Part shown: positions 20,091 through 45,900 of the stretch, piece after piece | How positions within the stretch are numbered: position 1 is the first letter of the stretch | Layout: the number at the start of each line of letters is the position of its first letter | Assembly (NCBI RefSeq): GCF_902459465.1 | Contig: NC_047074.1 | Span: 13,268,001 to 13,332,000, forward strand | Direction of reading: 5' to 3' | Length of the DNA: 64,000 nt | DNA from: Asterias rubens | Taxonomy: Eukaryota | Notes under the pieces: model-generated | The model's input: only the letters and a program-made list of their open reading frames with translations | Told to the model about the DNA's origin: nothing | Databases searched by the model: none | Position numbers and translations under genes: made by a program

Positions 20091-23000
20091 CCGTCTATCA
20101 AAGAGACATACTGATTGACGGTTGGACTTCAGACGACCCCCACCCACACACGGGAACTGGGGGTGTTCACATCACCAGGGGATCCCCGTCACAAAGTCAC
20201 GAATCACCCCGCATTAAACGCCGGGCTCAACACGGTGACCAACGGAGACACTACTACAGGAGCAAGAAAGCGTCAAGGGTCGAGTTGTCTCGCAGCGCCC
20301 ACCATGACTTCGAGGAAAGGTCGCGGATGAGGCGCGGTGCCACAGCCGTGGAATCTAACCTGTGGCCTGGTGCTATCATACCGTATGAAATAGACGCTAA
20401 ATGCGACGGTAAGACCATAGTGTGGGCGAGAAATAAATCCGCAAACAATTACAGAAAGTATTAGTTCTGTAATTTCTAGGCCTATCATTTTTGTTTTGAA
20501 GCACTTTTCCAATTGCTAGTGCTTCATTGTAGGTGTGAGTGCACAGCAACAATCACGGGAACACAAAGACACCTGTACAATGAACAAGAGATACATACTA
20601 ATAAAGTTTATCTTTACAGGTCTTGTATTGGACAAACTCAAGCACTTTTTTTCCATAATTGACACAACGATTATTATTTTACATAATTATTATAAATAAC
20701 ATTGAGAAGTCTCCCGAAATCCGATAATCAACTCCCCGTTCTCTGCAGAACATAGTCCCTTTTTGAAACCACGGCTTCGGCTATTGATTCGGCTTCAGGC
20801 TCCGTCCTCTTGTCTGAAGCCCAGCACGTACGCAAAGTCAAAACAACCGCGGGGCCAAGCTAGCCTAAAAGCCGAATCTGCAGCCGAAGCCATGGTTTTG
20901 AAAAGGGCCATAATATACCTGGCTGCCAAGTTAGTAGATGTACACAACGGTGTTACCGCAAACCAAATATGTATTGATAACTCGCCATGCAATGCCTCGA
21001 ATCCCATACGTTTAGAGATAACATCAGTGGTTTTAGAACTGTTGTTCATAAATATGGACACGAACATGTGATTGTGGTTGTGGTTTTGAAAATAAACTAT
21101 GTAAGCCATAATATAGCTAAATATTGAATGCGGTTTGTTTCTGTGTTGTAGAGATTGTTAAGTCTTATTATTTTGAACCCATTTGAATTTACTTTAGAGG
21201 ATACCAAGAACCTCGTCATACGGAGCATGCGCCATTGGGAGGAGCACACGTGTCTTCGGTTCATACCAAGAGCCAATCAAACTTCCTATGTGCTATTCTA
21301 CTTTTCTGGAGGGTGCGTATATATAACGTGATGTATTAACCTTTGACCTGATCCAGTTATACGGCTTCGCCTACAGCTAAGGCTACTTATACTGTTAAAG
21401 CCAAAGCCGTAGTCAAGCGAGTGCTTTATTCGTATAGATCGTGGGTCGAGTGTGTCATGGGCAATGTCCGAATTGGTGGCTACTATACGGTTATACGGCT
21501 ACGGCTGGATTGCCTTAGTCCTTAGCAGTCCTTAGCAATACATTTAGCAACAGCCATAGCCGTAAGGGGCCTGTGTCCGTCCATTCGATTATAGTATGGC
21601 ATTACTGCAATACACAATCAGACACTCAGGAAACCAAACAAAATGTCACACCAAAGATGTTGTTGCGCATGTTCATGCCATGTTGCCTTTTCTACAAACG
21701 TAACCCGCAGAGTCTACGGGCAGCGATTTCCTAGGGCATAATCTGACCCACAGTATACAAGAAGAGCATGCAATTTGGCATACATTGGAACTTAGTTTGT
21801 GTAGAGCCCAGTTCATACTTCATGCGAATGAAGTTGACGTCACAAATTAGCAACGAACAATTTTCAACAAATGAGTTATGCTCAACTCCTGCAAAATATT
21901 CGCTGCGAACAGAGGTGTGACGTCAAAATCTGCTTCGCATTCGCAAGAGGAAATATGAACCGGGCTTTAAGGTGGCGGAATTTCCAACTATTTAATCATG
22001 GTTTTAAATTTTGAAGATGCTGCTCACACGTTGGACGATCGGGCTCCAGACAGAAAGTCTACCTCGGACCTGGCTGTAATAGATTCCGCACCATCATCCA
22101 CGAGATTGGACATGTGGTCGGCTTCTGGCACGAGCAGAGCCGGCCGGACCGGGACGAGTTCGTCACCGTGTACGAGGGCAATATCTCCCCGGGAGATCTT
22201 TCAAACTTCTTCCGGTACGACACTGCCAAGGTAACGTCCATTTAGCCATAAAACTCAGGTTGTACCTGACTGGGTTCGAATCCTTCGTGGGCTCGAATGC
22301 CATTCGAGTAAAATGCCTGTGTTTTTCCCCCTCACAGAACTCGGGAAAGTTCAGTGAGTATACAATGCCAACACATTATTAGTGTATGGGTAAAAACAAA
22401 TTAATACTCAGGTGATGAAACTCGTTTAAAAATGTTATGGACAGCGTTTGCTCGGTAGCAAGTTTCCTCCCTTAAACAATGGCTCGCTTGCCAAATGGCA
22501 GTTAAAACGCCCAAGGACCAGTCAGAATTCTGTCCAACTATAGTCACCTTGCTATTTATTGTTGAAGTCCAACTGTTTACATGTAAACTACTTTATTAGT
22601 TCAAACTTCCATGCTAAAGATAATATTGCAGGCAACCTTTAAACAATTATACTCCAGTGAAAACCCTTCCGGACCAGTGAAATGACAAGCTAAACTTAAT
22701 GGACCTGCTAGCCTGTCTCAAGAATGTAATACGGGGAAACCCTGGTAGAATGTCTTCCTAAATGTAATTTGCTGCCTTGACACAAGGCTAAGAGATCCAC
22801 CAACCTTTGTGAGCGTCAGTCAACTAAATAAACTTCACAAGTAACCAATTATGCCAAAGTAAAACCGAACTCTTCATCAAAATTCAGATCAACTCACTTG
22901 AGCAGCCCTATGACTATGACTCCGTGATGCACTACGGACAGCACTCCTTCAGTCGGAACTTCAGAAAGACAATTATCCCAAAGACAGAGTGGGCTTCAAT

Positions 23001-26000: not shown

Positions 26001-29000
26001 CACATGGGCAGGGCATGGCTCCTTGACGAATTAGGAATCCGTATATAGGCAGGACAGGGCTCCTTGACGAATTAGGAATCCGTACATGGGCAGGGCAGGG
26101 TAAAAGAGTCTTACATCATGCAAGGAGTGCCTGGCTTTAATAGTCCCTTTTCGAAACTACGGCTTGGGCTTATGAGCTCCGGCTTTGGCTCCCTCAAAAG
26201 GTGCGCTTTTGGTAGGGTGCTTTAGCAGGCGGATAGAGTCTAAGCAGAGACTCAGCCGGAACCCTGGGTTTCGAAAAGGCCATAGTCTCTTCCCTTGGTA
26301 AAAGTGTACATTTTTGTTGTTATTACTGAAGTTGTCACAAAGTATTTATGTGTTTAACAGCTGACAAGGATGGACAGTGTCCCGGAGACTACATTGAGGT
26401 GCGAGACGGCCTGGGCGAGCTAGGCCGTCTAATCGGTAGATATTGCGGCGGCATCTTACCGACACCTATCACGCTGGACTCGGGCCGGGTGTGGCTTCGT
26501 TTCAGGGCACGTACCAGCCCAGTGTTCCAGTCCAGAGCTGGTTTTACGGCCAAGTTTCAATCGGTGTGTAAGTGCATAGGACTTACTTTGATTATTCTAT
26601 GATTTTTGTGTCATTTTAGATTCTTGAATTTGTTTTTCTTATAATATTAGCCCTTTTCTATATGGTGATGTATGGCCGCAAACAGGAAAGTATAGACAAG
26701 TAGACACAAATTTGACATATTATTTTATCTGTGTGTAAAATTTTTGCCAAATCAACCACTCAACCAATCAATTATGAAAAAAAAACTGAAAAAAATTCAT
26801 ATTCATATTATTTTATCCAACATCCATGGAAATATTCAGAGAAAATATTTCTCAAAAATCAATTCTGACTTTGGTTAAAAAAAGAGTGTGAAAACAATCT
26901 GAAAAAGCACTTCACAACAAAACCCGATTTCTTGGTAACATCTGGTTTTGTTTATAAAATCCAATATATACTGTAACTCTTCCCCATGGTATTGATTTTG
27001 TATTGCCTAATTTTTCTGGGATGTTGTGAAAAAGAAAACACAGTTGTGTAAGGGAATCAGTTTTGGGAATATCCAGACCCACAATGTTATTTCAACTAAT
27101 AGAAAAGACCTTGTACGTACACCTGTTCAGGGAAAGTGAATAGTCACCGTTGTGCAGGTCTTGTGTCACTCAAGGGAAACTGTAATTGATTGTTATTATG
27201 CCGTCTGTGCTGTAGGTCTAACATTGATAAGATGTGGCTATGCGAGAGTACAAGACATGTGACGAGAATTTACGAGATTATGGACCATACGAAAACTATA
27301 GTCTTGGTTGGTGGCCTTTGTGTATAAATTTAGAATGATATTTTCGGACATTCTAGAACTTCTATGACATTATCTTTATTTTTTACAGCTTTTGACGAGC
27401 GACTGACGGTGAGCAGTGGGGTGCTGAAGAGCAAGAACTACCCCGACGGCTTCCCGTCAAACACAGACAGCGTCTGGCAAATCACGGTGGAAGTCGGCTT
27501 CATGATTAATTTGAGGATTATCGAGTTACGAATCCCAGGTAAAACATCAGCACAAACATGCCTCCAAATTGCGTGGTTTCCTTTTACTTGGCGAAATACT
27601 ACGGTCGGCCATTTTGTGGAGTCAAAAATTTGACTCCACAAGTTGAGTAAAATATTTGACCCCACAAGTTGGAGTGCCGTAATAAATAGTTCAAGGAAAA
27701 CCATGCCATTTTGAGGAATACTTTGTGTGGATCATCATTGTGCTATACTTTTAAAACGTCTTTCTAACCAAAGCATTTCACAATAAGCGGTTTCAAACAC
27801 TTTTCATAGAACAACTCGCCCGATCCAAGGCAACGTGTCCCTAAAACATGGGTTGAAGGAAATTTATTCAAAGAGGGCGCTTTCAGACTAAATTTCTTCA
27901 CAATTCGCCATATTGGCGGACATAATGTTGATGAGGAAAAAATCTCCTACAATGTTCTTTCTCCGCAGTTATTTTTAATTTATCCTCTTATTGCAGTTGC
28001 TTCAGAAACCGGTTGTTATGGTGATTACCTCAACATCATTGAGGGCGACACCAGCCAATCACCTTTGATAACCAAGCTATGTCACTCACAGAGCAATGTG
28101 GGTGTGGTTTCTGCCGGCGAGAGTTTGCGCATTGAGTTACATTCGGGTAACCCCGAGAGGCGTGGCGACGTGGATCAGCCAACCAGATTCCACGCTCACT
28201 ATTCACAAAGAGGTAACTGTAGACTACTACTGCGCCTGTTTAATTTCAGATCAGCAAATGGCCGTCGGTACAATGATCGGGCGCCATTTTGAAATGTTGC
28301 ATTATCTGCGAGTAATGAAACACTTTGTGCACAATAATAAAAGTTTCACCTTGTTCACTCTCTAAAAAAGAAGTGTACAACAATTTTCTGAAATTTTGCT
28401 GTGTAAATGGTTATGGTTATGACTATTTTGGTTGTAGGGGGGGCCTACCCTTCACTTGTGTGAAATTTACTACAAAAGGAAAAGGTAATACAGTACCCAG
28501 CATTGAGTAGGAATCAATAGCCTAACACCAAGGTTCACACCACTCGAGAAGTGAGTAAAACAACATTTCTTTTGCACAAGAAGTCTTACGAAGTAAGCTG
28601 CACATAGAAGTATTTTGTGACAACAATGCAGAATGGGGCTTTTCTCATTACACGAACATGTTCTCAGCAAAGTAGTATTTACTTAACAAAATAGGCTACC
28701 AGACTATAAATACCACACTACTTTCTCGGTGCAGTGATGGACAGTTTTATTAAAGTAACAGCTACTTTTCTCTACAGATATCAATGAATGCCAGAGGAAT
28801 AGTGGAGACTGTGAGCAAGCTTGCCTTAACTTGATCGGTAGCTACGTATGTGGTTGCCAATATGGCTACGTGTTGGCAGCTAACTACAGAAATTGCATAG
28901 GTATTGGATTTATAAGGGTTTGGGTATTTTTTGTAGGACACAAAACACAACGTCCATTTATTTTCATTAAACGTACACGGTTTGAAAATAAAGATGGCAG

Positions 29001-32000
29001 ACTGCGGACACTGTGTATTGTGTCCTATACAAAATGTACCCAAACCCCTCAAACATCTTATATTTAAATAAAACACTATCTTGTGAAATGCAGAACATCA
29101 TTTTGCTTGTTCGTATAGTTTTAATGCCAATACGATGTGCACGATTAAAGAGCAAGAGAAAATGGCAAATTAATTGCTGTGATGCCCTCATTTTCCAAAA
29201 GATAAAGTGCTCATGTGAGTGGGGCAAAAATTACAAGTCTCCAATCTCACGTCTATGGTGTAAATAGCCATTGAATACGACATCCTTCGGGGACAACATC
29301 CCAAACATCCGATGACTTTTCCAGTGAGAAAAAGTGGTCTGTACATTATTGTTCGGGGACATTTCGGTTCACTGGTAATGATATTCAATCAAAATGGACT
29401 TGAGTTTGACATTTTAACTGGCGAACTTTTTCTTTTTAGGAAATAAAGACCAATTGCAATTGGTTATTGTAATCTAATGACATAATGTTTCAAATGTTGA
29501 TGTAAAGTACACTCTAAAAATATATTAGTCAAAATAACACTATTTGGTCATATGAGACATGATTTCGATGTATAGTCAAAACCATGTCTCATATAACTAA
29601 TCAGTGTTGTTTTGACTTATAAGTTTTTAGAGTGCAGAATTAACCGTACACAAAATAATGTAACGACCTATTTTTCCCAGAATGATGTCAACGGATGTGG
29701 TTTTTAAGTTTGCTTTCCTCAGATGTTAGTCATCTTTGGTAAATAATTCTTATCTGGGTTTGAATTGAATGCAGACATCGACGAGTGTTTAGACAACAAT
29801 GGCGGATGTTCAGATATCTGTGTGAACACTGAGGGCGCACACTACTGCACATGCTCAGACGGCTTTCTCCTTGCTCCAGACAACGCTACTCATTGCATAG
29901 GTAATTAGTTAATTCATTCATGATTGATATTTAAATCTTTACCAACCTAATTGAGGGTGAGCGTCACGAATCTTCAAACATTGAACAGTTTTTTTGATGC
30001 AGTGTTAACGCACTTGTCAAAGACCAGCATTGTCACTTGGTGTATCCCAACATAAACATAAAAATAATAAATCTGTGAAAATTTGGACTCAATAAAAGTT
30101 GCAACGAGAGAATGATGAAAGAAAAAGCACCCTTGTCGCACAAATTGTGTGCTTTCGTATGCACTATAAAGGCTTCAGGCCTGAAGTCTTTTAATATTTG
30201 AGTGAGAAATTACCTCGTTTTCAAAAATTACGTACTTACTTCAGAGGGAGCTGTTTCTCACAATGTTTTGTACCGTATCAACAGCTCTCCATTGCTCCTT
30301 ACCATTGCAAGTATACCTTTTATGCTAAAATTTCAGTCGTTACCATTGTCCAGTGCCATTAATCATTAAGCAGGGTAGGGCAAAACTAAATAAGTTTGTT
30401 TTTATCCTCGATGTAAACATTTTCACCCGCTAAACTCAATTTTGACAAAAGAAGCGGGAACTTTACTCTGCCTGATGCGAATCAGCATGCACCGTTGCTA
30501 TGGCAACTCTGAATGCGCGGTCATTCTCGTGCAGACGATCGTTCATGGTGTGCCAACTCGTCCCCATCAGCACCAAAAGCTTGTGGACTTCGTCATCGGT
30601 GACGTAGACTGGATCGATCTGCGCATGATCCACACACTCTTGATTATCCTGGTCGAACTTGAGCAGAACTTCGAGCGACGGCACTGTAAGCCCAATTCGA
30701 TCGAACACCGCGTCACGTGCACGGACGATGTCGTCATTACTCACGTGGTGTCTCCTTTCACTTCCGGAGTGATGCTTCTTCCCCTTTGACCCTTTCTTGA
30801 CCTCTTTGGTGACCCGAGAGTGCAAGAGTTCGAGAAAGCGGTGAACGTAAGTGGCGAGCACATTCCGGAGGCAACAGTGAGGTCCGCGTGAGGCACGACG
30901 CCCTCTATGTTTGAACTGTATATTAGCACATTTGTTTCGTTTTCCAGATGTTTGTCTTCGACGATTATGTGAACTTTGGCTTGCCGATCTACTTTCGTGG
31001 TTGTGACACGGTTCGGAAATGTGAGTTGCTTCGTCCGCGTTGTATTCATCCGCGGTCAGTGTTGTTGACGAAGTTAGATCCGGACTGTCTGGTACCTGAC
31101 CGTCACACTGCTGTGAATCAATAGTAACTTCAGCTAAACGTACTCCATTCTGTGATGAACGATTGACATCATCTCGTCTACAATCTGATTGTTTTTCGTC
31201 AGCATTCCCTGCTGGTGATTGGCTGTCATCATGACACAAATGCTGGTCAGTGTTCTCGCTGGAATTCCCTGCCTTTAAGTTTTCCTCAGATTCTACAACG
31301 TCATCACATTTTTCACTGGAGTGACGTTTGATAATCTCTTGTACGTAGCTATCAAAGGCTGCATACTCCTCGCTGGCGTTTCTGGTCGCTGCATCTGCGG
31401 ATGTAACTTTATTGAGATGTTTCTCCTTTCTTGTCTCTTGTACTCGTTCCCCTCCTTCTTTTTCATGTGAGAACTGAGCTTCCAGCCAACAGTCGTCTGC
31501 CGAGTTGTCTATCCGTGTACTTGAAGGGACCTCCCTCCTGAACTCGGTTAAATCTTTAGCCATGTCGAGAAGCTGCTGTTCTGCGTCCGACACACATCTC
31601 GAACACTCACTCGAGCCCGCGGGAACCTCCGTAGGCTCGTTCACGTTGCATATCACACCGATAGAAACGAGGTTGTTCTCCTGATGGATCAAACTACCCG
31701 AGTTATCGATACTTCGAATCGGAGACTGTTCCCGGTTACAAGTAGTCGATTGTCTGTCATTTTCAATGTCACAGCCACTTGGTGGTGTCGACTCCTCTGG
31801 TTCCGGTTCTGCATTTATTCGAATAGTTACACCGTGTGTGTTTGTTCTGTTTGATACCGGTGACGACAAGTCCTCTTGATTTTGAACAAAATCAGCAGAG
31901 TTCGTAATTATTTGTTCCTGATCTGTCCGCAGTGAATCTGGCCTCAGTGAGTTTCTAGTCGATACTTGGATGTTGCATTCATATTCCAGTTGGTCCTCAA

Positions 32001-35000
32001 CCGTTTCATTATCACCATTATCAAAAGTGCTGTTCAACTCGGCAGACATCTCCGTAATTTCTCTGTCTATCCGCGAGAAGTCATCGCGGAGGGTTCTGAC
32101 CCGATCCTCGGCGGACTCACAGCGTCGTATCTGCCCGTCCAGCAGCCCGTCGAAGTCCCTCACACGGCGACGTAGTGCGTCGATGCCGGAGTCCACACGG
32201 TCTAGACGGAGCTCAACGTCCGAGTAGAGACCGGGGATGAAGACTTGCTGACGGGGTGGAATGTGGGGAAGAGACGGTGAGGCTAGGCCTGACGGCATGA
32301 CGTCCTGTCCCATAACTGAGATGAAGGACACGGCTACAGAAATCCACTCTTCAGCTCAGGCTTGCTGTAAGAAGTCCACCCTTTTTCACGAAAATAGTCG
32401 TAAAACAAAATCACCTTCTTTGATTGTAAAAGGCAGCCAGTTGATGTTATGCGTTTGTTCGAAGAGCGCGTGTTGCTCGCGCTACGCAAAGATCACGCGT
32501 GAAGACGGTTTTGCATTCTCTCTGCTGCCAGTATAAATCCACTTTTGTGTTGGGCGAACTTATACAGTAGGCCTAGAGGTTGTTTTGGCTATCATGAGAA
32601 AACATTTCCCTAAATAATTGGTAAAAGGATCATCAGTTTATAGCAGATATACCATGATAATAATGCTCACTATGTCTTCGTGTTTGGCATATCGCCACTG
32701 CGTGCACACATTATTGAATTATGAATGACCTTATAATAACGTTTATGAGAGCGAGCTCACAGTCAGCCAGCTTCCGGACATCACCGGCATCTAATGCCAT
32801 GATATTCCAGGCGTCATAACCCGCTCGCCAGTTGCATCACTTCCGGGGAATATTGTTCGTATAACAACGGTACCACCTGCTCGGTATTCCTGATGCGAAT
32901 TTTTTAAATGATGATTATCACAATTTAGTCACACTTTGTTTTGTGCCGTGGGAGCGGTCTGAGACAATTACTTATTCAGTCCACTTCAATAATCGAAAGC
33001 TTTTAAACATCTTTGTACTTTGAAGGTTGGGATTGGGAATTTTAATTCGATGTTGAGCAAAGCTGTTTGAAAAACAGTTATTTTATAAAAAACGGATGAC
33101 ACTTTTGTCTACCATGACCCTCTCATTGGGCCAAACTGCTGGGAGAGACGCCTCTCAAGTACAACAGCATTAGCTTCATCGTCTTGGTTCATCTTCCTAT
33201 GAGTATAAGGAGGAGAAGGAAGTGGGATTATAGTTTATCTCGTGGCCTGCTAATTGATCGATGTTGTACACTCTAATAGCTACGGGTCAGAATATACCCG
33301 GATTTCGGGTAAAAGGGGCCCGACCCATTTATGGTTAAGGCTGACCCGTGAAGTGTGTGTGTTTTAATGTAATTTTATCTTGGGTTTTTCATCAGATCAA
33401 AGTGACCCATTTTGGGGGTCATTTCTTTTACACAGATTTCCGGGGCATTGACCCGGGAAGGGGCAATTATTTTTTAAGGGTTTACTGCGTCTTAGGAAAA
33501 GTGAAAATGGAGCGGGCAGGACACAAAGCCCCAGAAAAATTGACCGTTAGTGCTCAGTAATCAATCACTGGATGCCATATGGGGCGGAAACAATAAAAAT
33601 AGAGTGCACCAAGATGGAGAGATGAGCTGAAACAATACTGAGGGAAAGTCAATTTGTATCAACGAGCACAAAATATATACATTTGGAGATATCATTGTTT
33701 ATAGATTTGGGCCAGAGCCGATCCGCATCGAACATCCGAAAGAAAGACTTATAGGCTAAGTACCTGAGATTTTCGAGATCTTTTCTGGTCTCGGAAACCG
33801 CTTGTGAAATAGAGGCGAAGAAGGCCCGCGCGTGTCGGAGCCTTTTCCTTCGCTTCGCCAAGAAGTTCTCCTCCTCGTCGAGAGCTTTTTGGAACGAGGC
33901 GTACTCCCCGATGACCAATTCCATTTTCTCCATTGCTGCCTTGAAGCGGGCCTCCGTGGCGTCCCATTCGACCCTTGACATGATGATGATGATGATGATG
34001 ACGTCATTAACGAATCTTTTGCGAGAATATCAAAGTCAATCGTTATAATGTGTTTGAAACAGTGGATAAGGCTTTATTTTTACACAAATTTAAAACAGCC
34101 TAAATTATTTCGAAGAGTTGATGATGACGATATGCCTAAATGAAACAGTCGGGTTCCCAGATTCACAGTATTGTAAAGATGCATATCTGAAGACTATGGA
34201 TCTCTATTGTTGCTGTTGTTGTTGTTGATGTTGCTACTGCTGCTACTGATGTTGTGCTTGTTCGCCAAGTATTAAAGGCAGTGGACACTATCTGTAATTA
34301 CTCAAAATAATTATTATCATAAAACCTTTCTTGATTACGAATATCCCTCTGAAGTGACGTAGTTTTCGAGAAAGAAATAATGTTCCACGAATTTTATTTC
34401 GAGACCTCAGATTTAGAATCTGAGGTCTCGAAATCAAGCATCTGGGAGCACACAACTTCGTGCGACCATGGTGCGACAAGGTTGTTTTCTTCTTTCCTTA
34501 ATATCTCGCAACTTCGACGACCGATTGAGCTCAAATTTTCACAGGTTTGTTATTTTATTGAGATACAACAACTGTGAAGACTAGTCTTTGACGATTACCA
34601 ATAGTGTCCAGTGTCTTTAAGTCAAAGCACTTTTATTGTTTGTAATTATACAAACTAGTTATTATACAGGACGATTTGACAGTAGCCTATTATGTGGAAT
34701 CAGGCAATCCGTGAGGTTACAGGTGCGCTTCAATCTAAAAGAGATTTTGTTTTAAATATCATTGAAGTTCGTACATCCAATCGCTAGGAGGTTGTTCGCC
34801 TTACCTTCAAAACTATAGTTATTCTTGTCTCGACGTCATTTTGATGTCATTATCAAATGCTCTTGTTCATTGAAGAAAATGTAGGCCTACTGTTTGCGAC
34901 TGCCTCTCTTTCCCAAAACAAAGTGTATGCAACTTATTTTCAAGACAGAATACGCCTGGTCGTCCTTTATCCTTTCTTGTGAAGAAGTGAGTTTGAATGC

Positions 35001-38000
35001 CGTATCACTGTTCTCGTTGTAAGGTTGTTATACTGAGTTCAAATTACTTGTTGAGTGTCGATTCGATCAACAAATCCGAAATTCAAAGTTCTGTAAACTT
35101 GCTTGTTTGTTTACAGTGTAACCTAATCATTCAAAGGAAGGTTTTGCATTCCAGTTGTTTGTATTTATTTGATAATGATCGTTGTTGTATCAAATAAAAT
35201 AAACAAAGCATCAGTTCTGAGTTCATTGTTATTAAGTGACGTAAACAGAGCGTGTAATTTAAGGTCATTGTTTTAAGGGCAGCCTTTTGTGACGTAACTG
35301 AATCTACGCACTTCTCAGTCACGCGCCTTTTAAAAAGCAACGATCTTGCATCTCATTGGTTCAATAGATTGCTTTGAATATGCCTCTCTTAGTATAATTA
35401 TTTTATGCATGAACTACGTCACAATGCTAACCCATTTTGAGGCCAAGGGCACAGCCGGCCATACATATGCAAGTGGTGGCGCACGTGCGCCCATAGCCTC
35501 AATTTGGGCAAGGATTATGACGCCATCATACCTGCCAACTGTCCCGATTTTCCCGGGACAGTCCCGGTTTCTGAGTTTCAAAGACGCCTAAAATCGGGAC
35601 TGTCCCGGTTTCTCAGATTTCACGATTTTATTATTAAAAAGTAAGAAAATTGATGATGAACGGCTGAGAACAAGACTAGATGTATTTTAGACTTGCTGAG
35701 CGAACATGCATTTCATCCCAAAGTAGCCGTGTGAGTGAACAAGTACGCACGTGTAGAGGGAGATTCGTGTGGAGGACTTGTATCAAGTTTATTAAATCAT
35801 TTGTCAAGCATGTGGTGTGTGCGTGTGTGTGTGTATATCAATAAAAACAAATATTGTAAACGACTGATGAAGAGTTTAGTTGTATCATAGACTTGTTGAA
35901 ACATGCGCTCCCTCAAAAAGTGTCCGTTTAGTCCGTGCAACAACATTGTACGCGTAGAGAGATTCGTGGAGAGGACTTGTACCAAGTTTATTGTGTCAAG
36001 CCAATACATGCGGTGCGTGAGTGTGTGCGTGTGTACATACATAATACGTTATGCACATATTATGTAATTGCTTCGTCGACGACGTCGTGGTACAAAGGGT
36101 GTTGCGGTCGCCATTTTGTTAAAACCGTAAGTTGATTTTCAAAATGAGTGGCAGTAAATCGAAGAGATCCTGCGTTTTTAACGATAATTACGCCACAGAT
36201 TTCTTGCGCATTAAAAGCTCAACAAAAAGTAGGCATCACGCTTTCTGTGGCATATGTAGAACCGATGTGAGTATTGCTCACGGTGGACGGGGCGATATTA
36301 TAGTCGCCCACCTAAAAACTGCCAAAGAGGGAAACTTGCTTCGACACAAAATACAGTCCAGCCCTCCTAAAAGTAGCAAAACAATCCACATACAAAGGTC
36401 TACACCAATAGAAAGGTGGTGAAAAGCTGTGTTATCAAATAATAATGAACTAATGTGTTGTTTTTATGCAGTAGTTCCACATTCAAAGTTAATTTACTTT
36501 ATGTTAATGTTTAACCCCCAAATGACTCTGGAAGCTGTGTAGTTCTGTTAGCTTCCAGGGGGCACTGTCCCCTGCAATGCAGAGCCCCCTGGAAGAAAAC
36601 ACTCATTCACAGTACCCCGCCTTGGTGACCCCTGGACCCCGGCCAGGCTTGTCCCTATTTCTGGGCTTCGAATGTTGGCAGGTATGCGCCATGCATAATA
36701 TTAAGAGAGACGTATAATGGCCCCGCTTCTAAACATTTCAAACGCAGTATTTTAGTTTACTTTTATGACATTATTATTTTCAGATAAGAATGAGTGTGAC
36801 GACTGGGAGCGCAACGATTGCGAACAGCACTGTTATAACACAATCGGAGAGTACGCATGCGCCTGCAAGCCGGGTTTCATCTTAGCTCCGAATGGGCGGA
36901 ACTGCGTAGGTAGGTCTCATAGAGTTATATATAACTCTATGGTAGGTCTTTACAAAACCGATGTCAGTGCCCCCCCCCCCCAAAAAAAAAAAAAAAAAAA
37001 ATTGATTTGGTAATTACTCAAAATAACTGTTAAAGGCAGTGTACACTATTGGTAAATGTCAAAGACTAGCCTTTATAGTTGGTGTATCTCAACATATGCA
37101 TAAAATAATAAACCTGTGAAAATTTGAGCTCAATCGGTCATCAAACTTGCGAGATAGTAATGAAAGAAAAAACACCCTTGCCACACCAAGTTGTGTGTGT
37201 TTACATGGTTGATTTTGAAACCTCAAGTTCTAAACTTGAGGTCTCGAAATCAAATTCATGGAAAATTACTTCTTTCTCAAAAACTAAGTCACTTCAGAGG
37301 GAGCTGTTTCTCGCAGTGTTTTATACCATCAACCTCTCCCCATTGCTCGTAATCAAGAAAGGTTTGATGACAATAATTATTTTTAGTAATTACCAATAGT
37401 GTCCACTGCCTTTAACATAAAAAGTTCTCCCTCTGAAGATATAGTTTTTGAGAAAGAGGTAATTTCTCACTCAAATAATAAAATACTTCAGGCCTGAAGC
37501 CTTTTATTGTGCAACAAGGGTGTTTTTTTTCTTTCATTGTTCTCTTGCAACTTTGATGACCATTTTTTAGTCCAAATTTTATGTCATTTTTACGCATACT
37601 ACACCAAGTGAGAATACTGCTGACAATGCCAAAGGTGTCCGGTGTCTTGAAATCCCCTTGATTTGTCATCGATGTTCAACTTTCATCAATAATTCACGTA
37701 TAGTTGATTTTACTTTATACATCAAAAAATGAAGAAAATATAACCCTGTGAGATTTCAGGTATAAAGAACTGTGGAGGAGAGTACGGAGGCTACGAAGGG
37801 ACGTTTGTTTCTCCAGAGGGACCACCGATTAACTTCAATAGCACTCTGGACTGCGTATGGCGGATTCAGGTTGACCCGGCGTTCACGGTCTCTCTCAGGT
37901 ACTGTAGACCGCTGTGTGTTGAAGGTTACACGTTTCGACGCCCTTGTGTATATTTTCCTATTCCTAACCCTAACCCTTACCCTATCGTGTAAGTAACTAC

Positions 38001-41232: not shown

Positions 41233-42984
41233 ACAGACCAAACCGGCTTCAGAGCCAACACTCATCCAAAAGAGATTTTATTTCATGGTTGTACCCGCAA
41301 GTTTTATTATTACAGTTTATGCTTACGCCCTGGTTGTTGTTAGAAATAAAAAGATTAGATCATCCTTCTTTGTTAGTTTTGCAATTCAAATAAAGCAAAG
41401 TGGTTTGCCATACAATACTTCCCAACGCCATTAAAATGCCATTAAAATGATGTTTGTTGCTGCCCTTTTCTGAAAACGAAATTTTATTGTTTGAATGTAA
41501 GCCAGATGTTGTTGACTTCCTCGTTATTGTTTTGATGAATCAGATTAATAGTTAGGCCTAGTATTACCGTTTTGTTTGTTGTGGAAATTTAAAAAAAATA
41601 GTCCTCACAGAGAAAAGAACAAACAAAATCAAACACTTGAACAGTAATTTTGTTCCAACAGAATAATAATCGTTTCATGTGTTTTAACTGACTAACAATA
41701 AATATGGAAATAAACTACAACCTTGTATAAAAATAATGAGTAGGCCCTATCTAGGCCTAATTGTTATATTGGAGTCGTTGTTACAAAGGCGCGGGTAGAG
41801 GATCATGTACAGTCGTAAACTCGTAGAAGACGGTTTCGACAACCACACATGGTGCAATGTGAGTTCATGGTAAGGTATTGAGAACCAAAAGTAAACAACT
41901 CATTTACCCCCAAAATCTGGTATAGAGTAAAAACAAAATTAATATGCTCGAATACATTTCAAAATATTAATTTTTCTGCAATCAGACATTCGGATTTTTA
42001 TAGTCTATAACGGCGGCCCGAAAGTGTACAACGCAAAAAAATGTCCATAAATTATTTCTACTAAGAAGCAGAACAGTTGATAAACATTATGAGGAGCAAA
42101 TCGAATTTCAAAATGTCTGCTAGCAGAAAATTTGGATGAACGTTTAGGACCAATCCCTGGTGGTGACAGAATCTCCGGCCGGACAGATTTCTCTTGGACA
42201 GACAACAGCCGTCAATAAACAGCCGCCGGAATTTTCCTGAAGACTGGCTGCTGACTAACTATTGAGGGCGCTGTCTTTAGTGATCACGACAACAACAAAC
42301 GATGGCGAAAACAAACTTCGATCTACAATCAGTGTGGTAAAAAAACACCCAAATACGACATAATGCCCGTAAGTATTCTCAGTAAAATACGCTAGATTAT
42401 CAAATAAAGAAACAGGGTTAATCAATTCGTGGGATAACTTTTCAATAAAAAGTAGAAATGTGATCGAAGAACAAAGTTTTATTTTGTTTAGTTTCATAAT
42501 TTAATTTAAAAGTGATAAACATCCACTTCGTTCGATTCGAGAGATCGTATTGTTGTCCCAATCTGAGATCATACAGATATGAACCCTCCATGACCAGGGT
42601 GTGCACTGCATGGTTTACAGCCCAAACTTGTCCCCACAACAGCCAGGCTTGATCATGGTTTGAGCCATGTCGATTTAGAAAATCTTGGTTCAAAAATTAA
42701 GCACAAGCTTTGTAAATAAATGAGACCATAGAGGTAGAAATAGATTTCTACCTCCATGATGAGACCTGCTGACAATTAACATGCCTGAACTGCTGAACTG
42801 AAACAGTCCCAAGTCAGCGGTCCAGCTTGCAAGTTGAATGTTGAAAAGAACTCATAGAATTTAGAAATATGGACAATCTTGATGACTAGTGAGCTGACAA
42901 GCTAACAGTAACTGGTTCTGCTTGCTAGTCACTGAAAAAGTTAATAGCTAAAGTTAATTGACACCAACCAATTTGTTTTCCCAG

Positions 42985-45900
42985 AGTCACAGAAATTCAG
43001 GAGGTGGGAAACTATTGAGAAGACCACTGTCCCCAAGGACACCACCTGCTCCAAAGACTGGAGCCCCTGCCCCTGCCACAACCAAGAGAAGCAGTCACGG
43101 ATATCTTCAAAGCAAAAGCCTGCCCTCATTGGCAAGTCTTAGTCAGGATGAAGGCGATGACTTCGAGGAAGAGGAGTTGCTCTTTAGAGGTCGTGACCTC
43201 ACCCCGGTCCCAAGCGTTGTACCTTCACTAGCCTCAGAGTTTCAGGAGACTCAGTTTGCCCCTCAGAACACGCCGAAGATCCCGCTGAAGCCTTTGACGT
43301 CACGATCCCACCGATCCCACTCTGGTCCTGTGAACTCGCCCCGACTCCCAATCAGCAGGAGTGACTTGAAATTCGTCTTAGAGTCCAGGTATAAATTACA
43401 CCGGAGTGGCTCGGCGGAGACGTTCCAACCCGGATCGTTGGTTAAACCGTACAAGCCTCGCGGACGGGATGGTTTCCCACTGCGCATTCCGCGTCATATT
43501 CCTGAAGTTAAGAAGGAGTTTCTGTACCTTGATCATGAACATCTTAGATATCAGCTTCCTCCAGATTTCACACTGGAAGACTTTCAGGCTCAGTTTGCAC
43601 CCTATGGGAGACCCTTGCATCGAGACAAATTAAAGAAGGCTGTACTGTCAAAGCAGAACTTCAAGAAGATGACAACTTTATTTGCCTCCTTTGTAGATGT
43701 GCCTCTCCAGGAAAAGATCAACGTTATGGAACTTAAAGGTAATATTAACACTAACAGAGGATGTTTTTCTGCAATTAGGGTTTCAATTTAGACCAAGCCA
43801 AACTCTGCAGGTGTTACTTATTAAAATACTCTTAAAATTCTATATTTCACTAATTTATTTAAGATATCTTTGTGCGTGTTCCATATTGAGAGACTTTGAT
43901 ACTTTTAAAGAAAGGGTCATTGAACTTTTTCGTTTAACATTGGGTGCGTTCGTTTAGCTTCCCTGGGTCGCCCCCGGTCTGCCCCGGTACGTTCGAATAG
44001 CTTTGATGGGGCTCAACAGGGTCAGCCCCCAGTGCCCTGCTTGTGGAGTGGGTCACTTGGGGGTGACCTGATGTGCATGCTGTCACCACGAGAGGGTTAG
44101 TGTGATCGTTCGATTAGCTCTTGTCAGGGGCTCATCCGAGTGAGCACAGCGGGGTCGACCCATGGAAGCTAAACGAATGCACCCATTGTGTTCATTTAGA
44201 GAACAAATTATAAAGAAAGATCCATTAAAAGTCATATGTGAGAGTTTGAGTTGAATACAGAGCCAACTTTCTTAGAAAACAGCAAAAAGCTGTGTTGTAC
44301 ATTCACAAGAGACTGTTTGCGAACAGATGGACAGCAACCTTGCCAAATTTGAGAAATAAATTCATGCATGAATCATTTCTCAGATTCAAATTTTTTTTGC
44401 AGTGAACAATTTTCAAAACCATATTACTTCAAACAACCCTTATTCAAAACAGTGCTTTTACCAAGTAAGTTTTTATAGTCATTAATTTTTACTAAGTTTC
44501 ACTTTATTAATGTTTTTCTTAACCAATGTCAGGTGAGGATATTCCAGAGCAGATACCAAGAGTTCCACAACACCAGCTCCTTATCGAGATGGCTTGCATC
44601 ATCCGTCAGCAGATGAGGAACATGATCAATGAGGAGATGATCGGAAGCATGCCTGGTACCCTGGAGAACATGTCCACGGCACTGACTCCTGCAATGGCTG
44701 CCTTGACTTATGATCAGGCGGAGTCTGCGTCGAGTGCACTGGCAACAATGTCAAGGTGAGATCAGGGGGTGATTTCACAAAGAGCTAAGATTGATCTTAA
44801 CTGCAAGTCAATCGTGGTTGCTAAGTAAAGTGTGATGTCACAATACAAATCGCTATGGTAATACTGAATATTTGTCTAGCATCAGTGTTGTAGCCACGTT
44901 GGGTGGTGCTGGGCTAAGCAAAACAAATGGTGATGCCCAGCACAGATTTTCCCTAGAACAAATCAAAATATTGTCCACTGTGCATTGATCTGAGACACAG
45001 CTAATGATAAGGAACATCAAATGTCGAAGAGAAAAAACACAGTCAAAAGTACATTAAATCACTGAAAAACTTCATGTATGTGATCAACTTGTCGAAGTAA
45101 ACAATTTAAATTTTTATCAACAGACACGGAGGCACAGGTAGAGAGGCAATGTTCAGCGTGCCGGTCTCAAAATACTTCCAGGGATCCAGACGAAGCAATT
45201 CTCCCTTCAGTAAGTTTGAAAGAATAGTAGGAAGATGTTTGTGACCCTTTGGTGCTCTTATTACCCAAGTCAAACCCAAGTCTCGACACTCATGGGGTGA
45301 CAGGTCTTTTTCTTCAGCCGCGCCACGCATCTGGAACTCTCTACCACTTAATCTTAGATCTTGTCTTTGTACCACAAAATTCAAATCTCTTCTCAAAACT
45401 TCAGATAACATTAAAAGGGTAGGATTCTCCTTGTTTAATGTTTTAGCACAATCTGTGGCCGATGATCTTTGTGGTTAAACAGTTCTTTTATGTCTTGTTT
45501 TCTGTTGTTTGCAGATGAGGATGATTCTTCCACCATCACACCATCAGAGCTTGCAATACTTGACTGCCTCGTCAATGGCGGACTAGCCCTCAGCCTCAAG
45601 GTACATCTTTGTCTTTCAAAACACTATGTTTTTACACAGTCATAATCCAGTATATGTAAACTTCGTTCGTCATCACAACATCTCCTTGCAGTACACACTT
45701 GTAATGCGTACCTATGGAGACTGATCCTTTGTGGTTTCAGCTCCAGCTCCAAGGAATTCTCTGCCCTTGACTATCAGGACTACATCTTCCCGCTATGATT
45801 TTAAGAGGGCCATAAAGACACACCTTTTGTTAAAGTAGTGTTACTATTCTTGTTTTGATGTGTCGTTGTGCCTGTAGTGGTGGTATTTGTCCTCTTTATA

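What the first reader, a model, noticed from the sequence alone, without database searches (positions are those of the whole stretch)
30463..32313. 616-aa intronless orphan gene nested antisense inside the tolloid-like protease
Seen: an uninterrupted 1.85-kb frame on the minus strand, inside the 6.9-kb intron between the EGF2 and EGF3 exons. It encodes a heptad-like N-terminus ([20 protein letters not shown]...), ~350 aa of acidic/Ser-rich low complexity, a basic patch ([13 protein letters not shown]) and a helical C-terminal block ([14 protein letters not shown]...). It has no TIRs, LTRs or recognisable RT/transposase motifs. An ETS-motif-rich CpG patch at ~32760-32900 could be its promoter. 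Inference: a lineage-specific or domesticated gene (retrocopy or TE ORF1/gag-derived) living inside a secreted-protease gene, with likely transcriptional interference between the two.
Basis: partly seen in the sequence, partly recalled or inferred. Interest (0 to 1): 0.7.

Follow-up and report, generated by a model that had tools for sequence, protein, structure and literature searches.

The report
Conserved nested coiled-coil gene in tolloid intron
The 616-codon frame is a real, single-copy protein-coding gene. It has sat antisense in the same intron of a tolloid-like protease gene since before the sea-star orders split, so it is a lineage-restricted gene of unknown function and not a transposon relic.

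Summary
Window 30463-32313 (-) is an uninterrupted 616-codon frame, the longest in the window, and it is single-copy in the 417.6-Mb genome.

It has full-length orthologues in Asterias amurensis (90% identity), Patiria miniata (41%) and Acanthaster planci (38%). Each is a single coding exon lying antisense in the same EGF2-EGF3 intron of an astacin/CUB/EGF gene. A 1089-aa homologue on a marine metagenome contig sits beside the orthologous EGF exons.

Selection is purifying: dN/dS is 0.06 for the N-terminal coiled coil, 0 for the C-terminal helical domain and about 0.5 for the disordered middle.

No TE domain, flanking repeat or extra copy was found. A profile search of 1.84 billion proteins found relatives only in this small group. 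The one outside resemblance is structural and weak: SMCO1's C-terminal region (TM 0.64), with no support from sequence.

Two additions:
- A conserved 101-aa two-exon coiled-coil gene lies 0.8-1.3 kb upstream on the same strand. Spliced RNA-like contigs from a close relative tile from it through the big ORF.

Function remains uncharacterised. Interest is modest.

The parts
30463..32313 (-). Complete coding sequence of the nested gene (616 aa plus stop), in one exon
   Evidence: ORF listing and sequence. Single copy in the genome. Full-length orthologues start at the same MGQD. dN/dS against A. amurensis is 0.36 overall.
32020..32229 (-). N-terminal coiled coil, aa 29-98
   Evidence: One helix at pLDDT 80-94 in the full-length model. 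16 of 20 a/d heptad positions are hydrophobic in one register. dN/dS is 0.06. 30 columns are invariant across six homologues, including the distant ones. The only PDB hits are generic coiled coils.
30880..32019 (-). Acidic, Ser/Thr-rich disordered middle, aa 99-478. It has two conserved islands: [12 protein letters not shown] (aa 217-228) and [16 protein letters not shown] (aa 317-332).
   Evidence: pLDDT is mostly below 40, with weak helices at 243-261 and 308-332. Composition. dN/dS is 0.49. The islands are visible in alignment A1, and a related (V)xDIIRKYT island is visible by eye in the sequences of P0005 and P0006.
30466..30879 (-). C-terminal all-helical domain, aa 479-616
   Evidence: Domain model has pLDDT 78 and pTM 0.75, with helices at 7-36, 51-65, 69-81, 83-86, 98-112 and 119-139. 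There are 0 nonsynonymous against 8 synonymous differences versus A. amurensis. It is conserved in the 1089-aa homologue P0006. The only structural match that stands out is SMCO1 residues 72-197, TM 0.64.
32835..32879 (-). Conserved non-coding block CAGGTG-N16/17-ACAAT-N-CCGGAA-N-GATG (E-box plus ETS core). Candidate core promoter or TSS-proximal element of the 616-aa gene.
   Evidence: It is the best 4-way conserved block in the spacer. The composite pattern occurs exactly once, on the gene's strand, in the 64-kb window and in each 22-kb locus of the other three sea stars, 512-621 nt upstream of the ATG. Its function is inferred.
32354..32356 (-). Candidate 3' splice site (AG|CTGAA) of a possible 5'UTR intron. 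Inferred only.
   Evidence: AG followed by CTGAA is present 18-58 nt upstream of the ATG in all four sea stars, and GTGAG donor-like sites follow the ETS block. No read evidence was obtained.
33764..33981 (-). Exon 1 of a neighbouring conserved 101-aa coiled-coil gene on the same strand, in the same host intron
   Evidence: ORF. The orthologous ATG and exon are present in three other sea stars. Called as a 101-aa gene in Patiria and A. amurensis. The splice junction is seen in an RNA-like contig.
33109..33196 (-). Exon 2 of the 101-aa gene, stop included. The intron 33197-33763 is GT..AG.
   Evidence: Contig record 6 of run X1 joins 33763 to 33195 directly. The spliced CDS is 306 nt and 101 aa in all four species, with omega 0.13-0.17. 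Single copy in the genome.
29747..29905 (+). Host tolloid-like gene, second EGF exon (approximate limits). It forms the 5' side of the host intron.
   Evidence: tblastn to the Patiria and Acanthaster host genes. Pfam FXa_inhibition 4e-12 and EGF_CA 1e-7.
36762..36914 (+). Host tolloid-like gene, third EGF exon (approximate limits). It forms the 3' side of the host intron.
   Evidence: tblastn. Pfam cEGF 4e-8 and EGF_CA 3e-7.

Best explanation
This is a genuine, single-copy, protein-coding gene that is restricted to an echinoderm-like lineage. It has sat antisense in the EGF2-EGF3 intron of a tolloid/BMP1-like protease gene since before the forcipulatid and valvatid sea stars diverged, and apparently earlier.

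Shown: the protein has three parts. The first is a 70-residue heptad coiled coil near the N-terminus. The second is about 380 residues of acidic, Ser/Thr-rich disorder with two short conserved islands. The third is a 135-residue all-helical C-terminal domain. The two ends are under strong purifying selection and the middle is nearly free to change.

Inferred: it works as a non-enzymatic scaffold or adaptor. It would oligomerise through the coiled coil, and use the helical domain and the short conserved islands as binding surfaces held apart by a flexible acidic linker.

Inferred: it is transcribed from its own ETS/E-box promoter about 520 nt upstream of the ATG, possibly with a short non-coding first exon. 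The RNA-like contigs also allow read-through from the adjacent 101-aa coiled-coil gene.
For: - Real and single-copy.
- Orthologues at 90%, 41% and 38% identity with the same start and end.
- Only five hits among 1.84e9 representative proteins, all from this group.
- dN/dS against A. amurensis is 0.06 (N-terminus), 0.49 (middle) and 0 (C-terminus). Patiria against Acanthaster gives 0.10, 0.43 and 0.18.
- Single coding exon nested antisense in an Astacin+CUB+EGF gene in Patiria, Acanthaster and A. amurensis.
- The 1089-aa homologue on contig L004 lies next to antisense EGF exons that are orthologous to window exons 28765-28902 and 29747-29905.
- Architecture from the models and the heptad count.
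- Expression: in run X1, from a relative about 92% identical in DNA, a contig lacks the 567-nt intron of the upstream gene and is therefore RNA-derived. Contigs tile 33971 down to 30120 across the ORF.
- Conserved E-box/ETS block.
Against: - No biochemical function is indicated by any family. There is no significant Pfam hit and no solved fold (Foldseek PDB E at least 0.8; best VIA Z 5.1).
- Scaffold or adaptor is a default reading of this kind of architecture, not a tested one.
- The expression evidence comes from assembled contigs of a related species whose library type is only guessed. No run labelled RNA-Seq was listed for this sequence.
- The putative promoter block is itself covered by the spliced contig of the upstream gene. 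An internal transcription start is therefore not demonstrated.
- The spacer holds 13-34 upstream ATGs. These are awkward for translation unless a 5'UTR intron or a downstream start site removes them.
Confidence: 0.8

Rival explanations
1. Dicistronic unit. The 101-aa gene and the 616-aa ORF would be two cistrons of one transcription unit. The big ORF would be expressed from the shared mRNA, or only after internal initiation or processing. It would then not be an independent gene.
For: - Same strand, 795-1288 nt apart, in all four sea stars.
- Both are single-copy and both are under purifying selection.
- In run X1 a spliced contig carrying both exons of the small gene runs on about 500 nt past its stop. 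Overlapping or near-abutting contigs continue through the big ORF, with one roughly 40-nt gap in the listed pieces at 32110-32149. Contig depths are similar (201, 222, 247), apart from one contig at 60 around the ATG.
Against: - The tool itself warns that contigs across two genes do not show a single transcript and that contig depth cannot rank parts of a gene.
- 13-34 upstream ATGs in the spacer make scanning or reinitiation implausible.
- A conserved ETS/E-box block and candidate splice sites suggest a separate promoter.
- The public gene calls list the two coding sequences as separate genes in Patiria and A. amurensis.
- No upstream small ORF was detectable in the 1.1 kb available upstream on L004.
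Confidence: 0.3
2. Highly diverged SMCO1 (C3orf43 / DUF4547) relative. This would be an animal-wide small coiled-coil protein that acquired a roughly 380-residue disordered insertion in echinoderms.
For: - In both AlphaFold DB searches the only hits that stand out match the C-terminal domain to the C-terminal two-thirds of small proteins. These are human and mouse SMCO1 (residues 72-197 of 214; TM by query 0.64; Foldseek probability 1.00 and 0.96) and unnamed 190-250-aa entries, one of them labelled only as uncharacterized LOC100177486.
- All other rows have TM of about 0.25.
- By its name and by where the match begins (residue 72), SMCO1 appears to place a coiled coil before the matched region. 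I did not inspect that region.
- No canonical DUF4547 match exists elsewhere in this genome.
Against: - Foldseek E-values are only 0.08-1.4, identity is 13-18% and rmsd 5-8 A.
- Pfam DUF4547 does not match the protein or its C-terminal domain, even at E up to 10.
- The 1.84e9-protein profile search found no SMCO1-like protein.
- Helical bundles match each other easily.
- By its name SMCO1 is predicted to be a single-pass membrane protein, whereas the last helix here is amphipathic and charged.
- I could not obtain SMCO1 sequences for a profile-profile test.
Confidence: 0.2
3. Domesticated or decaying transposable-element ORF (gag/ORF1-like), or a retrocopy of a multi-exon parent gene.
For: - The coding sequence is a single exon and begins with a coiled coil, as LINE ORF1 proteins do.
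- A LINE-1 ORF1p chain appears among the weak coiled-coil hits, at E 6.8.
- High-copy interspersed repeats lie near both ends of the cassette, at about 29879-30300 and 34213-34400.
Against: - One copy in 417.6 Mb, and no second match even to the C-terminal profile.
- No RT, integrase, transposase, gag or zinc-knuckle domain.
- No direct or terminal inverted repeats of note. The only pair spanning the cassette is 33 nt at 88%.
- The position and orientation are the same in four sea stars and in a more distant animal.
- The E 6.8 hit is one of 32 generic coiled-coil matches.
- An ancient retroposition cannot be excluded, but no parent gene is detectable.
Confidence: 0.04

Closest known systems
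NCBI 'uncharacterized protein' LOC119724303 (Patiria miniata), LOC110985364 (Acanthaster planci) and the 618-aa Asterias amurensis protein
   Same: They are full-length orthologues at 41%, 38% and 90% identity, with the same start (MGQD...) and the same C-terminus. Each has a single coding exon nested antisense in the same astacin/CUB/EGF gene.
   Different: The disordered middle differs in length (616 to 689 aa). None of them carries any functional annotation or Pfam domain.
SMCO1 / C3orf43 (single-pass membrane and coiled-coil domain-containing protein 1; Pfam DUF4547)
   Same: The predicted C-terminal helical domain superposes on SMCO1 residues 72-197 (TM 0.64, Foldseek probability up to 1.00), and it is the only hit that stands out. 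By name and by where the match begins, SMCO1 appears to have the same coiled-coil-then-helical-domain order.
   Different: There is no sequence-level similarity: DUF4547 does not match. This protein is three times longer, with a roughly 380-aa disordered insert, and has no hydrophobic transmembrane helix. SMCO1 itself is barely characterised; the one functional paper found is PMC5603091, seen by title and abstract only.
Nested (intronic, opposite-strand) genes of animals, as a class
   Same: A complete gene with its own coding exon and a probable promoter lies inside an intron of a larger host gene on the other strand. This is established general knowledge of nested genes.
   Different: Here two adjacent genes share the intron. 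The arrangement is conserved across asteroid orders and in a more distant animal. Nothing on this case was found in the literature searches.

Membership tests
Transposable-element ORF1/gag-derived gene | Multiple dispersed copies, or detectable homology to a TE-encoded protein | tested here: not met
   One match in the whole genome with the protein and one with the C-terminal profile. No TE-related Pfam family was found. The LINE-1 ORF1p match at E 6.8 is noise among generic coiled coils.
Transposable-element ORF1/gag-derived gene | Terminal repeats (LTR/TIR) or target-site duplications flanking the unit | tested here: not met
   There are no direct-repeat families. The only inverted pair spanning the unit is 33 nt at 88%.
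Retrocopy | An intron-containing parent gene elsewhere in the genome, a poly(A) remnant and target-site duplications | tested here: not met
   No second locus matches. An ancient event whose parent was later lost cannot be excluded.
SMCO1 / DUF4547 (PF15080) | A match to the Pfam DUF4547 profile at or above its gathering score (27 bits) | tested here: not met
   DUF4547 is not listed for the whole protein at E up to 1, nor for the C-terminal domains of five homologues at E up to 10. There is no match in the genome. The tool warned that its control genomes also gave nothing, so the genome result is weak.
SMCO1 / DUF4547 (PF15080) | The same fold in the C-terminal helical region | tested here: inconclusive
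   TM 0.64 and probability 1.00, but E 0.08-1.4 and rmsd 5-8 A, comparing one predicted model with another.
SMCO1 / DUF4547 (PF15080) | A single transmembrane helix | tested here: not met
   No hydrophobic segment is present. The last helix ([15 protein letters not shown]) is charged and amphipathic. The C-terminal domain is 37% hydrophobic with D+E 15% and K+R 14%.
Nested intronic gene (opposite strand) | The whole coding sequence lies within one intron of a host gene, on the other strand | tested here: met
   Host EGF exons end at about 29905 and resume at about 36762 on the + strand. The ORF is at 30463-32313 on the - strand. The same holds in three other sea stars.
Nested intronic gene (opposite strand) | An independent transcript with its own promoter | tested here: inconclusive
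   RNA-like contigs cover the ORF in a relative, and a conserved ETS/E-box block lies upstream. The start site was not mapped, and read-through from the upstream gene is possible.
Protein-coding gene under selection (as opposed to a chance or decaying ORF) | dN/dS well below 1 and a reading frame kept open in distant species | tested here: met
   Omega is 0.06, 0.49 and 0 by region against A. amurensis, and 0.35 overall for Patiria against Acanthaster. Frames of 616-689 aa are intact in four species, and 1089 aa in the metagenomic homologue.

The most novel reading that the evidence does not exclude
The tolloid-like intron would harbour an ancient two-gene cassette, with a 101-aa coiled-coil protein followed by the 616-1089-aa protein. 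The cassette would be transcribed as one dicistronic unit whose products act together. The large protein would be the echinoderm counterpart of the uncharacterised animal protein SMCO1, expanded by a disordered insert. That would give a conserved deuterostome dicistron and a first genomic handle on SMCO1 function.
Probability: 0.1. Interest if true: 0.55.

Novelty: new member of a known kind. Interest (0 to 1): 0.35.

Why it matters
It replaces a possible 'TE relic or orphan' with a defined, selectively constrained gene family that has no detectable relatives outside an echinoderm-like group.

The nesting inside a key developmental protease gene (tolloid/BMP1-like) has been stable over a long period. 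That makes this a clean case for testing whether host and nested genes are co-regulated or interfere with each other.

The adjacent conserved 101-aa gene and the conserved E-box/ETS block give concrete targets for experiments in sea-star embryos.

The gene is already listed as 'uncharacterized protein' in public annotations, and no function emerges here. The value is descriptive rather than surprising.

Tried and rejected
- Pfam on the whole protein, on the N- and C-terminal blocks of all homologues and on the 101-aa protein. Only sub-threshold coiled-coil noise came back: AATF-Che1 at 0.007, KxDL at 0.014, DUF7310 and FlaC.
- PDB sequence profiles. Only generic coiled coils matched.
- Foldseek against PDB, VIA-align wide and ESM-Atlas fold search on the C-terminal model. 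Nothing rose above background: E at least 0.8, Z at most 5.1, TM at most 0.40.
- ESM Atlas feature searches on the C-terminus, the N-terminus and the small protein. No usable hit.
- A second word-indexed search with the widened alignment A4 returned only the sea stars.
- The JGI metagenome contig scan found no relative.
- Search of the own genome with PF15080 gave nothing. The tool's control genomes gave nothing either.
- hhalign of the small protein against the big N-terminus shows no homology (probability 3.5%).
- Complex prediction of the big N-terminus with the 101-aa protein gave no verdict (score 0.19 against a mark of 0.34). This is evidence neither for nor against binding.
- tblastn of the small protein on L004 and L005 gave no convincing upstream exon within the 1.1 kb available.
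- N-myristoylation. The invariant Met-Gly fits the PROSITE pattern, as I recall it, in the distant homologues (MGLPNS). It fails in the sea stars, where the position that should be S/T/A/G/C/N is Met. The conserved G may simply reflect the ATGG start context.
- The sigma-70 promoter and terminator scan is irrelevant for a eukaryote.
- A second query for runs labelled RNA-Seq listed none.
- Literature searches for this nesting, and for the TARA sample that yielded the metagenomic homologue (L005), found nothing.

Full report
**Observation**

The frame is real. The ORF listing reports 30463..32331 (-), 622 aa from a GTG.

It is by far the longest open frame in the window: 630 codons stop-to-stop against 297 for the next. 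At the window's base composition about 3e-13 such frames are expected by chance.

G+C rises from about 0.37 in the flanks to 0.46-0.53 over the ORF.

The host context is also as described. Plus-strand exons hitting Astacin (22015-22239), CUB and three successive EGF_CA/FXa_inhibition exons (about 28765-28902, 29747-29905 and 36762-36914) surround the ORF. It therefore lies in a roughly 6.86-kb intron between the second and third EGF exons.

**Not a transposon and not a species-level orphan**

The protein matches only its own locus in the 417.6-Mb genome. So does a profile of its C-terminal domain.

There is no significant Pfam domain and no flanking LTR- or TIR-like repeat.

A word-indexed search found three full-length relatives annotated 'uncharacterized protein':
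- Asterias amurensis, 618 aa, 90% identity
- Patiria miniata LOC119724303, 689 aa, 41% identity
- Acanthaster planci LOC110985364, 668 aa, 38% identity

The alignment shows three conserved regions. The N-terminus (aa 1-95) is nearly invariant, and so is the C-terminus (aa 480-616). Two islands stand out in the middle: [12 protein letters not shown] and [16 protein letters not shown].

An exhaustive HMMER profile search of 1.84 billion representative proteins found only five hits:
- the two valvatid proteins
- a 93-aa fragment identical to the C-terminus
- two metagenome-derived proteins, P0005 (563 aa) and P0006 (1089 aa)

P0006 shares both terminal blocks. P0005 shares the N-terminal block; it ends before the C-terminal region and appears to be the first half of a split ORF.

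**Selection**

Nei-Gojobori estimates against A. amurensis (dS 0.15) give dN/dS of 0.36 overall. By region the values are 0.06 for aa 1-95, 0.49 for aa 96-478 and 0 for aa 479-616, where there are 0 nonsynonymous against 8 synonymous differences.

Patiria against Acanthaster gives 0.10, 0.43 and 0.18 for the same regions.

This is the signature of a translated protein with two constrained ends and a fast-evolving linker.

**Conserved nesting**

In A. amurensis, Patiria and Acanthaster the orthologue is a single coding exon lying antisense inside a gene whose product carries Astacin, CUB and EGF domains.

The 5.8-kb metagenome contig L004 encodes the 1089-aa homologue. Two EGF_CA/FXa_inhibition exons lie on the opposite strand, 160 and 760 nt beyond its stop. 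Each is most similar to one particular sea-star exon. L004 5174-5392 pairs with window 28765-28902 (28 of 43 identical). L004 4572-4766 pairs with window 29747-29905 (24 of 45 identical).

So the same intron of the orthologous host gene already held this gene in a more distant animal, which remains unidentified.

**Architecture**

The full-length AlphaFold model gives one long helix at aa 29-98 (pLDDT 80-94). The stretch aa 99-478 is disordered, with two weak helices at the conserved islands. A helical domain spans aa 480-612. Modelled alone, the C-terminal domain has pLDDT 78 and pTM 0.75.

The N-terminal helix has a continuous heptad: 16 of 20 a/d positions are hydrophobic in one register. 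It matches only generic coiled coils in the PDB.

The C-terminal domain has no convincing solved counterpart. In AlphaFold DB one group stands clear of the background. It consists of human and mouse SMCO1 (residues 72-197 of 214; TM 0.64; probability 1.00 and 0.96) and unnamed 190-250-aa entries.

Sequence gives no support for that link. Pfam DUF4547, the SMCO1 family, does not match, and nothing in the genome matches it. I treat this as a lead at about 20%.

A second gene lies on the same strand in the same intron. Exon 1 is 33981-33764 and exon 2 is 33196-33109, separated by a GT..AG intron. It encodes a 101-aa helical protein.

Its length and exon structure are the same in all four sea stars, with omega 0.13-0.17. 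It is single-copy and was called as a 101-aa gene in Patiria and A. amurensis. It has no family assignment.

**Transcription**

Four runs were laid on 28500-34400. Three cover the introns and behave like DNA.

The fourth is X1, a 52-Mb contig set from an organism about 92% identical in DNA. It has essentially no depth over host-intron sequence at 29091-29878 or over the small gene's intron. One of its contigs joins 33763 directly to 33195, so it is RNA-derived.

That same contig continues about 500 nt past the small gene's stop, to 32595. Three further contigs then cover 32620-32150, 32109-30550 and 30579-30120.

The ORF is therefore transcribed in a close relative. The tiling is compatible with a dicistronic transcript and equally with overlapping mRNAs. 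The tool warns that contigs cannot decide between these.

Two things argue against translation from a dicistronic mRNA. The spacer holds 13-34 upstream ATGs. It also contains a composite E-box/ETS block, CAGGTG-N16/17-ACAAT-N-CCGGAA-N-GATG, at window 32879-32835. This block occurs exactly once per locus, on the gene's strand, 512-621 nt before the ATG in all four sea stars.

Donor-like GTGAG sites just after the block, and a conserved AG|CTGAA 18-58 nt before each ATG, suggest a 5'UTR intron that would remove the upstream ATGs. This is inference only, so 'intronless' is established only for the coding sequence.

**Most likely mechanism**

I read the product as a non-enzymatic scaffold or adaptor. 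It would oligomerise through the conserved coiled coil. It would present a conserved helical domain and two short motifs on a long acidic linker.

The gene's reality, conservation and nesting are shown, and I put them at about 95%. The scaffold reading is inferred from architecture, at about 50%. My 0.8 confidence applies to the statement as a whole, weighted toward the parts that are shown.

A test of whether the 101-aa protein binds the big protein's N-terminus gave no verdict. The two are not homologous.

**Novelty**

The gene is already present in public annotations as an uncharacterised protein.

New here are three things: the deep conservation of its nesting in the tolloid-like intron, the linked 101-aa gene, and the conserved promoter-like block.

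It is a new, well-documented member of a known kind: a nested, lineage-restricted gene. Interest is modest.

Noticed in passing
window 33109-33196 and 33764-33981 (-): A conserved two-exon gene for a 101-aa helical protein with no family assignment lies 795 nt upstream of the 616-aa ORF, in the same host intron. It is present with identical length and exon structure in four sea stars (omega 0.13-0.17).
   Followed up: yes
window about 29879-30300 and about 34213-34400: Very high-copy interspersed repeats lie just outside the two-gene cassette. Summed contig depth is 1e5-1e6 in all four runs, with many joints between the two places. The first lies in the 3'UTR region of the nested gene. The repeat family was not identified.
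   Followed up: partly
window 33972-34011: A (TCA)n/(ATC)n microsatellite sits immediately upstream of the ATG of the 101-aa gene, inside its likely 5'UTR. Read laying was cut there.
   Followed up: no
window 28765-28902, 29747-29905, 36762-36914 (+): The host astacin/CUB protease has three consecutive calcium-binding EGF exons between CUB domains. Canonical BMP1/tolloid, as I recall it, has single EGFs alternating with CUBs, so this looks like a lineage variant of the tolloid architecture.
   Followed up: partly
window 29510-29634: A near-perfect hairpin (59-nt arms, 83% complementary, 7-nt loop) lies in the host intron between the first and second EGF exons. It looks like a MITE or foldback element.
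   Followed up: no
window 42973-45217 (+); L002 1-2783, L003 1-2027, L006 1-1162: The next gene downstream of the tolloid-like gene is a leucine-rich-repeat protein of about 635 aa, on the same strand as the tolloid-like gene. The arrangement is the same in all four sea stars.
   Followed up: no
unfetched 28.6-kb ENA contig carrying P0005: The 563-aa homologue is followed 17 nt later by a 565-aa ORF on the same strand. This is probably one ORF of about 1100 aa split by a frameshift or stop.
   Followed up: no
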